A stretch of 63,268 nucleotides of DNA, counting the filler, from Octopus bimaculoides (Eukaryota): NCBI RefSeq assembly GCF_001194135.2. It is 5 parts of 5 records of this genome, joined end to end, with 100 filler letters (N's around TTAATTAATTAA, not from the genome) between each part and the next. Parts side by side here need not be neighbours in the genome. Positions count along the whole stretch, not along the records: positions 59,071 to 61,296 come from NC_069002.1; 4 more parts are not named here. The stretch is one strand, 5' to 3'. The notes beneath the pieces are model-generated. The model was given only the letters and a program-made list of their open reading frames with translations. It was not told the DNA's origin and ran no database searches. Made by a program: the position numbers and the translations under genes. Of the stretch, positions 58,951 through 61,396 are shown piece after piece (the stretch's first letter is position 1; each line of letters starts with the position of its first letter).

Positions 58951-59164
58951 AATATTGTCATTGAAGAAACNNNNNNNNNNNNNNNNNNNNNNNNNNNNNN
59001 NNNNNNNNNNNNNNTTAATTAATTAANNNNNNNNNNNNNNNNNNNNNNNNNNNNNNNNNNNNNNNNNNNNATATATATATATATATATATATATACAGAT
59101 ATATATATATGGTTGATCACACACATATATATATATACACATATGTGTGCACACACATACATGC

Positions 59165-59206
<42 letters not shown>

Positions 59207-59920
59207 ATACACACATACATACATGCATGCATGCATACATGCATACGTACATTTATGCAAGCGTGCACGCAAAGCTATGAATCTATAAGTACACATGCGT
59301 ACGCAGTAATGGTCTACACAATGACACAAGCCGTGAACGGAAGTCCACATGTAGGAGTCAGAAAGGTAACAGAGGTTAGAGTGGAAAGAAATATTGTAAA
59401 GATATACACCAATAGAAATGATATTGTGTATGTGTGTGGATGGGGGAGGGAGACTTTGTGTGTGTGTGTGTGACATTGTATTCGTGTGTATTTAGATTTC
59501 CATTGCTACTCATATACATAGATATATATCTCTGTATGATTATGCGCATATATATTTATCCATATAGAGGTTTGGTGATGAAAACACGAAAATAGAACTC
59601 AAAACATGGATATACATACATACATACATACATACATACATACTCACATACATACATACATACATACATACACATTTACATACACACATATATATATATA
59701 TATATTATTATTATTATTATTATTATCATTATTATTATTATTATTATTATTAATCATCGGGAGAAGTTATTGAATGACTCAAGGATCGAACGGTTCTTGC
59801 ATTCGGAAGTGCGAATGACGAACGGAGACCCTAGATTCGCTCTACTTCTGCCAATTATTATTCATTAGAATATATGTGTGTATGTGTGTGTGTGTGAGTG
59901 TGTGTTTGCGTGTGTTTGCG

Positions 59921-59952
<32 letters not shown>

Positions 59953-60540
59953 CCACGAGCGTAACAGCACTGTTTTTCAACTAGTGTTTTTTTTTTTTAT
60001 TCTTTTTTTTTGTTAACCTCTTTGTAGCTAGCGGTTTGGCATAAGAGACAGATGAAATAAATCGATTCGTTCGACTAAAACCCTTCAACGCAGTGCTGCA
60101 GCATGGCCGGAGTTCAATAACTAGAGCAAGCCAAAGATGATATGTGTACATGTTAAATGAGAAAAGGAAATTAGTAGTTGTCCACCTTTGGAACTACTGG
60201 CATTCATTTTCTCTTACCCATGCTTTCTCTTCATGGATTTACCTAATGAATATCCGTTTTCATTTGATTTAATTGGACTCCTACCCACTTTCTAGACATA
60301 AAGAATTCCAATACTTATCATCTATTAGGAATATTCTTCAACCATTACAAATGTTTAACCTGTCTCTCTCCAATAACGGTATACTCAGCCTAACAGTATA
60401 CTAAGCACGATGTTCCAGTAGCTGTGATATTCTAGAAACAGCTGTTAGGGACAATCTAAACTTGAAAAAATGTTAGCCTTTTATTTTCTGCTTTAATATA
60501 GGCCTGCCGGCTCAAGGGGAAGCCACTTCTAGCTTCAGAA

Positions 60541-60649
60541 AGGCAGTCACAAAATCACATCTTCAACTGTAGTTGTGATTTTGTGACTGCCTCACCGCTA
60601 TTATACCGGTTTGATCTTCAACTGTAGTTCAAACCGGTATAATAGCGGT
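60541..60649. other. Two adjacent perfect hairpins (19-bp and 21-bp stems) with an identical 14-nt loop
   Basis: 60541-60559 pairs with 60574-60592, and 60594-60614 pairs with 60629-60649. Both loops are TCTTCAACTGTAGT. Confidence 0.95.
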
Positions 60650-60724
60650 ATACCAATTTGACCAGTCAGAGAGCATACCTATTTGTTTGAGTTACCCCGG
60701 TGAAAATTCTTCGTATATATTAAT

Positions 60725-60773
<49 letters not shown>

Positions 60774-60774
60774 C

Positions 60775-60831
<57 letters not shown>

Positions 60832-60934
60832 AGACCTAGCAATATAGCTGTTTTTAATACGCTATTCATATTTACTGACAATTATAGTTTTACTTTTTGG
60901 TAAAACTTTGCACATGTTGCTGTCGATATTAATT

Positions 60935-61000
<66 letters not shown>

Positions 61001-61184
61001 GCATGAGTATACTTAATCAATATTTCAAATTCACCCGCAAGGCTTTTGTTTCTCTGGCCCCATAATAGAAGACATTCCAAAAGTGCTACTCGTTGGTACT
61101 GAACACGGAACCATGTTGTTGGTAACGGAAACTTCTTACTACGCCACACACCCATGTCTATACATACATACATACATACAGACA

Positions 61185-61217
<33 letters not shown>

Positions 61218-61396
61218 TATTATTATTATTATTATTATTATTATCATTATTATTATTATTATTATTATCATTATTATCATTATTATTAGACAAGACNNNN
61301 NNNNNNNNNNNNNNNNNNNNNNNNNNNNNNNNNNNNNNNNTTAATTAATTAANNNNNNNNNNNNNNNNNNNNNNNNNNNNNNNNNNNNNNNNNNNN

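What the first reader, a model, noticed from the sequence alone, without database searches (positions are those of the whole stretch)
60541..60649. Twin perfect hairpins with identical loops: a 16-bp duplication around an insert copied backwards from both flanks
Seen: the structure is X-L-X'-c-Y-L-Y'. L = ATCTTCAACTGTAGTT (60559-60574 and 60614-60629), and the 39-nt middle is the exact reverse complement of the 18 nt left of the first L, plus one C, plus the reverse complement of the 20 nt right of the second L. The two stems are unrelated to each other. Inference: the ancestral locus was X-L-Y'. A staggered cut 16 nt apart (the 3'-overhang geometry of LINE target-primed insertion) left two 3' tails. 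Each snapped back through the terminal A-T pair of L, copied about 18-20 nt of its own strand, and the two ends were joined. That would be an RNA-free 'abortive retrotransposition' or bilateral snap-back repair scar. Alternatives: a transcribed double-hairpin small-RNA precursor with a shared loop, or a library/assembly artefact.
Basis: partly seen in the sequence, partly recalled or inferred. Interest (0 to 1): 0.78.

Follow-up and report, generated by a model that had tools for sequence, protein, structure and literature searches.

The report
Double fold-back DNA repair scar
Two adjacent perfect hairpins with the same 16-base loop are really there, and are best read as the scar of one staggered chromosome break whose two single-stranded tails each folded back and acquired an inverted copy of their own flank before rejoining; this is an unusually clean natural example of known repair chemistry, not a gene, and no second copy or read was available to confirm it.

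Summary
X(18)-L(16)-X'(18)-C-Y(20)-L(16)-Y'(20) occupies 60541-60649, with perfect stems and identical loops. It is far beyond chance: DNA fold z = -12, and 0 such twin structures in 1.03 Mb of control DNA.

It matches no Rfam family, tRNA, ORF, plasmid or published sequence.

A one-step model reproduces all 189 bases of 60501-60689. The empty site is X-L-Y'. Two nicks leave 16-nt (14-16) 3' overhangs. Each tail folds onto its own first base (A:T) and gains 18 or 20 nt of inverted flank. One untemplated C joins them. No single replication template switch can produce it.

New points:
- The two tails are complementary, so both can fold back or neither can. That explains the symmetry.
- The folded 3'-OH abuts the recessed 5' end. 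The inverted arms may therefore be snap-back synthesis (Pol theta-like) or the original opposite strands after hairpin capping and clipping 15-20 nt from the tip (MRN-CtIP-like).

A LINE endonuclease as the cause of the break is possible but unsupported.

No orthologue, empty allele or read could be reached, so neither reality nor polarity is confirmed.

The parts
60541..60558 (+). X: outer (5') arm of hairpin 1. Inferred to be original left-flank DNA.
   Evidence: Exact reverse complement of 60575-60592. Continuous with the unique left flank. Part of the inferred empty site.
60559..60574 (+). L copy 1: loop of hairpin 1, ATCTTCAACTGTAGTT. Inferred to be the 3' tail of the top strand at the left break end.
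   Evidence: Identical to 60614-60629. Its first A and last T can pair.
60575..60592 (+). X': inner arm of hairpin 1, an inverted copy of X. Either newly synthesised by snap-back or the original bottom strand.
   Evidence: rc(X), 18 of 18. The simulation reproduces it.
60593..60593 (+). Single C at the junction of the two inner arms. Filler or terminal misincorporation.
   Evidence: Continuing either inverted copy would have given T, not C.
60594..60613 (+). Y: inner arm of hairpin 2, an inverted copy of the right flank Y'.
   Evidence: rc(Y'), 20 of 20. The simulation reproduces it.
60614..60629 (+). L copy 2: loop of hairpin 2. Inferred complement of the 3' tail of the bottom strand at the right break end.
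   Evidence: Identical to copy 1. Start-to-start spacing is 55 nt (family D8).
60630..60649 (+). Y': outer (3') arm of hairpin 2. Inferred to be original right-flank DNA.
   Evidence: Exact reverse complement of 60594-60613. Continuous with the unique right flank.
60575..60629 (.). Net 55-nt gain relative to the inferred empty site X-L-Y' (equivalently 60559-60613).
   Evidence: The empty site of 134 nt against the observed 189 nt for 60501-60689.

Best explanation
This is a one-off mutational scar, not a gene or a mobile element.

The ancestral locus read X-L-Y'. The two strands were nicked 14-16 nt apart in the orientation that leaves complementary 3' single-stranded tails: L on the left end and rc(L) on the right end. 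Each tail folded back so that its terminal T paired with the A at the base of the same tail. Because the two tails are complementary, this pairing is available on both ends or on neither, which is why the outcome is symmetric.

The folded 3'-OH then sat directly next to the recessed 5' end of the opposite strand. Two sub-routes follow, and they give the same sequence:
(a) The 3' end was extended along its own strand for 18 nt (left) and 20 nt (right). This is snap-back synthesis as done by polymerase theta in SD-MMEJ/TMEJ. A retroelement reverse transcriptase could also do it.
(b) The 3' end was ligated to that 5' end, capping each end with a hairpin. The hairpin was then clipped on the 5'-terminated strand about 18-20 nt from the tip, as MRN-CtIP/MRX-Sae2 does. 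In that case X' and Y derive from the original complementary strands, like giant P-nucleotide tracts.

The two extended 3' ends were finally bridged with one extra C and filled in.

Shown: the sequence relations, and that this scenario regenerates the sequence exactly. Inferred: the ancestral state, the break, the enzymes and the order of steps.
For: - Exact structure and extreme non-randomness.
- Simulating the scenario gives the observed 60501-60689 base for base.
- No single template switch or direct copy explains it, even with 2 mismatches allowed.
- All 54 duplicated or inverted bases are identical. This implies one recent event: P(no difference) is 0.07 at 5% divergence.
- The inner arms abut with 1 nt between them, and the outer arms run straight into unique flanks with no boundary, TIR or TSD.

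Literature:
- Snap-back synthesis gives reverse-complement copies of the adjacent flank, primed by very short inverted repeats within 30 nt of the break (PMC5728401).
- A single base pair suffices to prime POLQ, and errors cluster where synthesis aborts (PMC5068794).
- Pol theta makes snap-back tracts of up to 15 nt and adds untemplated bases (PMC4912351).
- Breaks with complementary 3' overhangs yield small tandem duplications of the overhang (PMC8355091).
- MRX-Sae2 clips the 5'-terminated strand 15-20 nt from blocked ends and nicks hairpin-capped ends when RPA binds the loop (PMC6315862). The stems here are 18 and 20 nt.
Against: - No empty allele, orthologue, paralogue or read could be obtained. 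Polarity (which arms are ancestral) and even physical reality rest on parsimony alone.
- The fold-back primer is minimal. It is one A:T pair plus a 4-of-6 quasi-palindrome that 3-4% of random 16-mers share, and L has no stable fold (dG 0).
- Reported Pol theta templated inserts average about 7-10 nt and are error-prone, about 1 error per 30 nt. Two perfect tracts of 18 and 20 nt are on the long, clean side (P about 0.28 for no error).
- The final junction shows no microhomology, only a 1-nt filler.
- The cause of the staggered break is unknown.
Confidence: 0.6

Rival explanations
1. Aborted retroelement (LINE or Penelope-like) target-primed insertion. This is nested within the best explanation as the source of the break. 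The element's endonuclease made its two staggered nicks, no RNA was copied, and the element's own reverse transcriptase or a host polymerase self-primed on both 3' flaps.
For: - The 3'-overhang geometry and a 14-16 nt duplication fit ends made by ORF2p, which give 12-18 bp TSDs, short 3' overhangs, and local inverted duplications and templated insertions at target sites (PMC11702581).
- ORF2p extends hairpin primers efficiently, copies DNA templates, adds untemplated bases and switches templates (PMC10830420).
- The top-strand nick context AGTT/CAAAC loosely resembles TT/AAAA-type sites.
- An A-rich tract next to a repeat-like segment lies about 500 nt away.
Against: - There is no reverse-transcribed sequence, A-tail or microsatellite tail between the L copies.
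- The bottom-strand nick context AGAT/GTGAT has no resemblance to an endonuclease site.
- The nearby A-rich tract has no supported TSD (p = 0.38).
- The organism and its LINE endonuclease preferences are unknown.
- Any pair of nearby opposite-strand nicks gives the same ends.
Confidence: 0.15
2. Replication-based serial template switching (MMBIR/FoSTeS-like, or two successive short template-switch mutations). One nascent strand copied X-L, folded back to copy X, jumped to the other template to copy Y' backwards, then returned to the start of L.
For: - Template switching creates perfect inverted repeats and hairpins in one event (PMC5453318 and PMC10710096, listed).
- Two successive switches can formally generate the sequence: 76 parametrisations, some of which template the C.
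- The same A..T microhomology could guide both switches.
Against: - No single switch-and-return event works, so three or four switches are needed.
- The two-event solutions that explain the C require an extra duplication followed by a deletion.
- This model gives no reason why both fold-backs use exactly the same 16-nt loop boundaries. Complementary 3' tails give that for free.
Confidence: 0.15
3. Laboratory or assembly artefact: a fold-back or chimeric molecule made during amplification or library preparation and carried into the contig.
For: - Polymerases in vitro also do snap-back synthesis.
- The 54 repeated bases are perfect, as expected for something very young.
- Only one sequence is available, and no independent copy was found.
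Against: - Ordinary fold-back artefacts continue into the reverse complement of the whole flank. Here each inverted tract stops after 18 or 20 nt and the sequence resumes the genome on the far side.
- The junction X'-C-Y must exist in the reads themselves.
- L is shorter than usual assembly k-mers, so it cannot cause a graph mis-join (inference).
- L, its reverse complement and its 14-nt core appear in no paper.
- The region has no plasmid match.
Confidence: 0.1
4. A functional element: a transcribed tandem double-hairpin RNA, or a pair of protein-binding sites, in which the shared loop is the recognised part. It might be one member of a family with this loop and variable stems.
For: - Very stable predicted hairpins in RNA as well.
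- Identical loops on unrelated stems are what a loop-recognising system would look like.
Against: - No Rfam family reaches threshold. The hairpins score 15-23 bits against gathering scores of 60-95.
- Stems of 18-20 bp with 16-nt loops and no bulges are not canonical miRNA precursors (general knowledge).
- X' contains TTTT, a Pol III stop.
- The fact that the outer arms plus one loop form a seamless sequence with the flanks, and that the inner arms abut, is unexplained by function.
- No second locus with this loop was found in any searchable collection.
Confidence: 0.05
5. An inserted hairpin-ended or dumbbell DNA. The 109 nt equal a 110-nt dumbbell (a 39-bp stem with two L loops) opened and lacking one base. 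Alternatively, the cross-arms of a parvovirus-like T-shaped terminal repeat.
For: The arithmetic fits: X-L-X'-C-Y-L-Y' plus one G would close into a perfect dumbbell.
Against: - The flanks are not complementary to each other, so there is no A-A' stem.
- There is no target-site duplication around the 109 nt.
- There is no coding capacity nearby.
- A 55-bp duplex unit is too small for any known element.
- The dumbbell description is simply another way of writing the bilateral fold-back.
Confidence: 0.02

Closest known systems
Snap-back templated insertions of synthesis-dependent MMEJ / polymerase-theta-mediated end joining (PMC5728401, PMC5068794, PMC4912351)
   Same: The insert is the reverse complement of the flank next to the break. 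It is primed by a tiny inverted repeat at the 3' end, sits within 30 nt of the end, stops after a short tract, and is accompanied by an untemplated base.
   Different: Here both ends did it symmetrically. The tracts (18 and 20 nt) are longer and cleaner than the reported averages of 7-10 nt. The whole 3' overhang is kept as the loop, and nothing was deleted.
Small tandem duplications at breaks with complementary 3' overhangs (CST-Pol alpha-primase fill-in plus NHEJ, or TMEJ; PMC8355091)
   Same: An exact direct duplication of the sequence lying between two opposite-strand nicks. Both overhangs are retained.
   Different: The two copies are not adjacent but separated by 39 nt of inverted flank. 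That study's 'TD+' class (duplication plus additional mutation) is the nearest category.
Hairpin-capped break ends and their opening: MRX-Sae2/MRN-CtIP clipping, and P-nucleotides in V(D)J and hAT excision footprints (PMC6315862)
   Same: Palindromic additions arise when a hairpin end is nicked away from its tip. The clipping distance of 15-20 nt on the 5'-terminated strand matches the stem lengths.
   Different: Classical P-nucleotides and hAT footprints are palindromes with no loop and only a few nt long. Here a 14-16 nt non-palindromic loop sits at the axis.
Target-site alterations by LINE-1 ORF2p (PMC11702581, PMC10830420)
   Same: Staggered break with 3' overhangs, duplications of 12-18 bp, and local inverted duplications and templated insertions. 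The enzyme can extend hairpin primers.
   Different: No retrotranscribed insert, no A-tail and no convincing endonuclease motif. Organism unknown.
Short template-switch mutations that create hairpins and new miRNA genes (PMC5453318, PMC10710096)
   Same: A perfect inverted repeat created in one mutational step from neighbouring sequence.
   Different: A single switch-and-return cannot give this structure, and the hairpins are too short for canonical miRNA precursors.

Membership tests
Snap-back templated insertion (SD-MMEJ / TMEJ scar) | The insert is the reverse complement of sequence immediately flanking the break | tested here: met
   X' = rc(X) 18/18 and Y = rc(Y') 20/20. The templates start 14-16 nt from the inferred 3' ends.
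Snap-back templated insertion (SD-MMEJ / TMEJ scar) | A primer repeat: the 3' terminus pairs with a base next to the template | tested here: met
   The terminal T pairs with the A at the base of each tail, and 4 of 6 outer loop positions pair. This is weak support, because 27% of 16-mers have the terminal pair.
Snap-back templated insertion (SD-MMEJ / TMEJ scar) | Microhomology where the extended end meets the other end | tested here: not met
   The inner arms are joined through one C that neither continuation templates, since both predict T. At most a 1-bp C:G bridge, if both ends carried an extra base.
Snap-back templated insertion (SD-MMEJ / TMEJ scar) | Dependence on polymerase theta | not testable with these tools
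   Needs genetics.
Tandem duplication from a 3'-overhang staggered break | Exact direct duplication of a short tract | tested here: met
   The 16-nt L occurs twice at 100% identity.
Tandem duplication from a 3'-overhang staggered break | The copies are head to tail with nothing between them | tested here: not met
   39 nt (X'-C-Y) lie between the copies.
LINE target-primed reverse transcription event | Target-site duplication of about 7-20 bp | tested here: met
   14-16 nt.
LINE target-primed reverse transcription event | Reverse-transcribed sequence with a 3' tail between the duplications | tested here: not met
   The insert consists only of inverted flank plus one C.
LINE target-primed reverse transcription event | Endonuclease target motif at the first nick | tested here: inconclusive
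   AGTT/CAAAC on the top strand and AGAT/GTGAT on the bottom strand. The host's LINE preferences are unknown.
Single short template-switch mutation (four-point model) | The product equals prefix + one reverse-complement tract + suffix of the ancestor | tested here: not met
   0 solutions, even with 2 mismatches allowed.
miRNA / hairpin RNA gene | Match to a curated family, or precursor-like architecture | tested here: not met
   The best Rfam scores on the hairpins are 15-23 bits against gathering scores of 60-95. The stems are 18-20 bp and perfect, with 16-nt loops.
miRNA / hairpin RNA gene | Conservation with compensatory changes; small-RNA reads | not testable with these tools
   No homologous locus was found and no expression data are available.
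Parvovirus-like T-shaped terminal repeat / hairpin telomere | Two small palindromes enclosed by a long stem formed by the flanks | tested here: not met
   The flanks are not complementary.
hAT/RAG-type excision footprint (P-nucleotides) | Palindromic addition directly abutting the duplicated target, with no loop | tested here: not met
   The symmetry axis lies inside a 16-nt non-palindromic L.
Hairpin adapter / library construct | The loop equals a known adapter or published oligonucleotide | tested here: inconclusive
   L, rc(L) and the 14-nt core appear in 0 papers, and there is no plasmid match. No adapter database or reads were available.

The most novel reading that the evidence does not exclude
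The twin hairpin is a 'ghost' target-site duplication. A retroelement endonuclease cut both strands, no RNA was copied, and both 3' flaps self-primed. If so, scars of this shape would form a recognisable class that records aborted retrotransposition attempts. Counting them genome-wide would give a first direct measure of how often target-primed insertion fails after second-strand cleavage.
Probability: 0.15. Interest if true: 0.65.

Novelty: new variant of a known kind. Interest (0 to 1): 0.4.

Why it matters
If real, this single locus preserves both ends of one break in readable form. It shows the length of the overhangs, the fold-back point, how far each end was copied or clipped, and the joining base. 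Repair scars rarely keep that much information, because most involve deletion.

It gives a precise, searchable signature: a 10-20 nt direct repeat enclosing inverted copies of both flanks. It also gives a testable rule: the bilateral outcome needs the first and last base of the overhang to be complementary.

It shows how a perfect double hairpin can arise from ordinary sequence in one step, which bears on the origin of structured RNAs and fragile palindromes.

It would not change current understanding of repair. Every step has a known enzyme that could do it.

Tried and rejected
Led nowhere:
- Exact-pattern scans for the X-L and L-Y' junctions in metagenome contigs and in prokaryotic genomes: 0 hits.
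- Four look-ups of the piece's longest ORFs in the assembly index: none on record.
- Two composite-ORF protein searches, meant to reach other assemblies of the locus or to name the organism: no hit.
- Full-text searches for L, rc(L) and the 14-nt core: 0 papers.
- Plasmid BLAST of 60441-60740: no match.

Considered and rejected:
- Chance.
- Rfam miRNA hits. All are sub-threshold and lie on microsatellites, or score 15-23 bits on the hairpins.
- A tRNA or SINE promoter box at the site.
- A larger foldback element or TIR/TSD around the structure.
- A single template switch.
- A hAT/RAG-type footprint, because the axis is not at the end of the repeat.
- Recombinase att/lox-like sites, because the arms differ while the core is shared, and the excised circle would be only 55 bp.
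- ODIRA-type inverted triplication, because the copy numbers do not fit.
- L as a general loop with stems, because 120 chance occurrences have stems of 4 bp or less.

A target-site duplication for the neighbouring A-tailed repeat-like segment was tested and is not supported.

Full report
**1. What is there**

The piece (59071-61296) is non-coding, eukaryote-like DNA. About 40% of it is microsatellite: (AT)n, (AC)n/(TG)n, (ATAC)n and (TAT)n. It has no credible ORF and no tRNA.

Inside a unique stretch, 60541-60649 reads X(18)-L(16)-X'(18)-C-Y(20)-L(16)-Y'(20).
- X' is the exact reverse complement of X, and Y' is the exact reverse complement of Y.
- The two L copies (ATCTTCAACTGTAGTT) are identical.
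- The two stems are unrelated to each other, and neither stem extends outward.
- L begins with A and ends with T, so the structure can also be read as 19- and 21-bp stems with 14-nt loops.

**2. Not chance**

- As single-stranded DNA the region folds at -45.5 kcal/mol, against -11.3 +/- 2.8 for shuffles (z = -12.1).
- L occurs twice in the piece even with 3 mismatches allowed (0.05 expected).
- A script for the generic pattern (same loop of 8-24 nt, two perfect stems of at least 8 bp, inner arms within 6 nt) finds only this site in the piece. It finds none in 1.03 Mb of unrelated control DNA.
- L alone is common by chance, with at least 120 hits in viral contigs. None of those has a flanking stem longer than 4 bp. 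L is therefore not a general loop with stems there.

**3. What it is not**

- Known RNA family: no family reaches threshold. The strong-looking miRNA rows all lie on palindromic microsatellites and are below gathering score. The hairpins themselves score only 15-23 bits against gathering scores of 60-95.
- Larger foldback element, or a terminal repeat with a flanking stem: the flanks are not complementary, and nothing else in the piece resembles this region.
- Vector or plasmid: no match.
- Published adapter or oligonucleotide: L, its reverse complement and its 14-nt core appear in no paper.

**4.

I built the inferred empty site (left flank-X-L-Y'-right flank, 134 nt). I nicked the top strand after L and the bottom strand at the X|L boundary, which leaves 16-nt 3' tails. 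I folded each tail onto its own first base, added 18 and 20 nt copied from the tail's own strand, and joined the ends with one C. The product equals 60501-60689 base for base.

A brute-force search found no single switch-and-return template switch and no single direct copy that converts the empty site into the observed sequence, even with two mismatches allowed. Two successive switches can do it, 76 ways, but those that account for the C need an extra duplication followed by a deletion.

The break model is therefore the most economical. A multi-switch replication model remains possible.

**5.

(a) Symmetry. The two 3' tails are complementary to each other. 'First base pairs with last base' is therefore true for both tails or for neither. 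About 27% of 16-mers satisfy it. This explains why both ends behaved identically, without a second coincidence.

(b) Geometry at the fold. The folded 3'-OH lies directly beside the recessed 5' end of the opposite strand. Two routes follow.
- Extension (snap-back synthesis). This is described for SD-MMEJ, where inverted primer repeats of 2-9 nt within 30 nt of the break are used (PMC5728401). It is also described for polymerase theta, which needs only one base pair to prime, makes reverse-complement inserts by snap-back, and makes errors where synthesis aborts (PMC5068794). Pol theta can make snap-back tracts of 15 nt and add untemplated bases (PMC4912351).
- Ligation, giving hairpin-capped ends. 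X' and Y are then not copies but the original complementary strands. The 18- and 20-nt stem lengths would record where the capped end was clipped. MRX-Sae2 cuts the 5'-terminated strand 15-20 nt from blocked ends, and nicks hairpin-capped ends when RPA binds the loop (PMC6315862).

The two routes give the same sequence and cannot be separated here.

(c) The lone C. It is not what either inverted tract would have added next, since both predict T. It is therefore a filler base or a terminal misincorporation.

(d) Weak priming. L has no stable fold of its own (dG 0). Its 4-of-6 quasi-palindrome occurs in 3-4% of random 16-mers. The fold-back was held by very little. That is acceptable for Pol theta or for stacking on the duplex end, but it is not positive evidence.

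**6. Age**

All 54 duplicated or inverted bases are identical. The probability of that is 0.34 at 2% divergence between copies, 0.07 at 5% and 0.005 at 10%. The event is recent, unless the structure is under selection or is an artefact.

**7. Source of the break**

Retention of both overhangs as a direct duplication is what breaks with complementary 3' protrusions give (PMC8355091).

LINE-1 ORF2p produces exactly such ends. It gives 12-18 bp duplications, short 3' overhangs, and local inverted duplications and templated insertions at target sites (PMC11702581). It can extend hairpin primers, copy DNA, add untemplated bases and switch templates (PMC10830420).

Nothing in the sequence points specifically to it, however.
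- There is no retrotranscribed insert or tail.
- One nick context (AGTT/CAAAC) is only loosely endonuclease-like, and the other (AGAT/GTGAT) is not.
- A nearby A-rich tract next to a repeat-like segment has no supported target-site duplication.

I treat the LINE origin as a nested possibility of about 0.15.

**8. What could not be done**

No second copy of the locus is reachable.
- Both junction patterns are absent from metagenome contigs and from prokaryotic genomes.
- The piece's ORFs are not in the assembly index.
- Two composite protein searches found nothing.

Three things therefore remain untested: the empty allele, read support, and the genome-wide frequency of the pattern or of L.

The organism is also unidentified. 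From memory only, 60030-60140 and 61017-61160 resemble common cephalopod SINE-like repeats. That is a lead, not a result.

**9. Artefact**

An artefact cannot be excluded without reads, but it is unlikely.
- Usual fold-back artefacts run on into the reverse complement of the whole flank. Here each inverted tract stops after 18 or 20 nt and the genome resumes on the other side.
- The X'-C-Y junction must exist in the reads themselves.
- L is shorter than usual assembly k-mers, so it cannot cause a mis-join (inference).

**10. Verdict**

The scar combines two known kinds of scar, an overhang duplication and a snap-back or P-nucleotide-like inverted tract, in a bilateral form that I did not find described. 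A search for target-site duplication with snap-back and target-primed reverse transcription returned no paper.

- Confidence in the break-and-fold-back scar: 0.6.
- Interest: 0.4.

Noticed in passing
window 60725-60828: A compound palindromic microsatellite, (AC)25-(AT)n-(TG)17. It forms a long hairpin and draws many sub-threshold Rfam miRNA hits, e.g. mir-3149 at 84.9 bits against a gathering score of 100. These hits are composition artefacts, not genes.
   Followed up: partly
window 59612-59752 and 61160-61288: The same ordered compound array, (ATAC)n-(AT)n-(TAT)n, occurs twice about 1.5 kb apart in the same orientation, with up to 92% identity over 105 nt (family D2). It could be the tails of two copies of one repeat family, or parallel microsatellite growth.
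   Followed up: no
window 60374-60406: A 17-nt unit (TAACAGTATACTAAGCC) is present 1.9 times at 87% identity. This is an older small tandem duplication about 135 nt upstream of the twin hairpins.
   Followed up: no
window 59976-60145 (minus strand): Read on the minus strand, a repeat-like segment (60145 down to 60030) is followed by an A-rich tract (AACAAAAAAAAAGAATAAAAAAAAAAAACAC) and then (TA)n. This has the look of a retroposed SINE-like copy. A flanking target-site duplication is not supported: only 6 nt are shared (p = 0.38).
   Followed up: partly
window 60030-60140 and 61017-61160: From memory only, these segments resemble abundant cephalopod (Octopus) SINE-like repeats, which would suggest a cephalopod source. 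This is not verified. There is no tRNA, no B-box and no protein-level hit.
   Followed up: partly
window 59071 and 61296 (piece ends): Both ends of the 2.2-kb piece fall inside microsatellites, (AT)n and (ATT)n. This is typical of a short-read contig that breaks at simple repeats. If so, the twin hairpin is supported by read k-mers rather than by a single long read (inference only).
   Followed up: no
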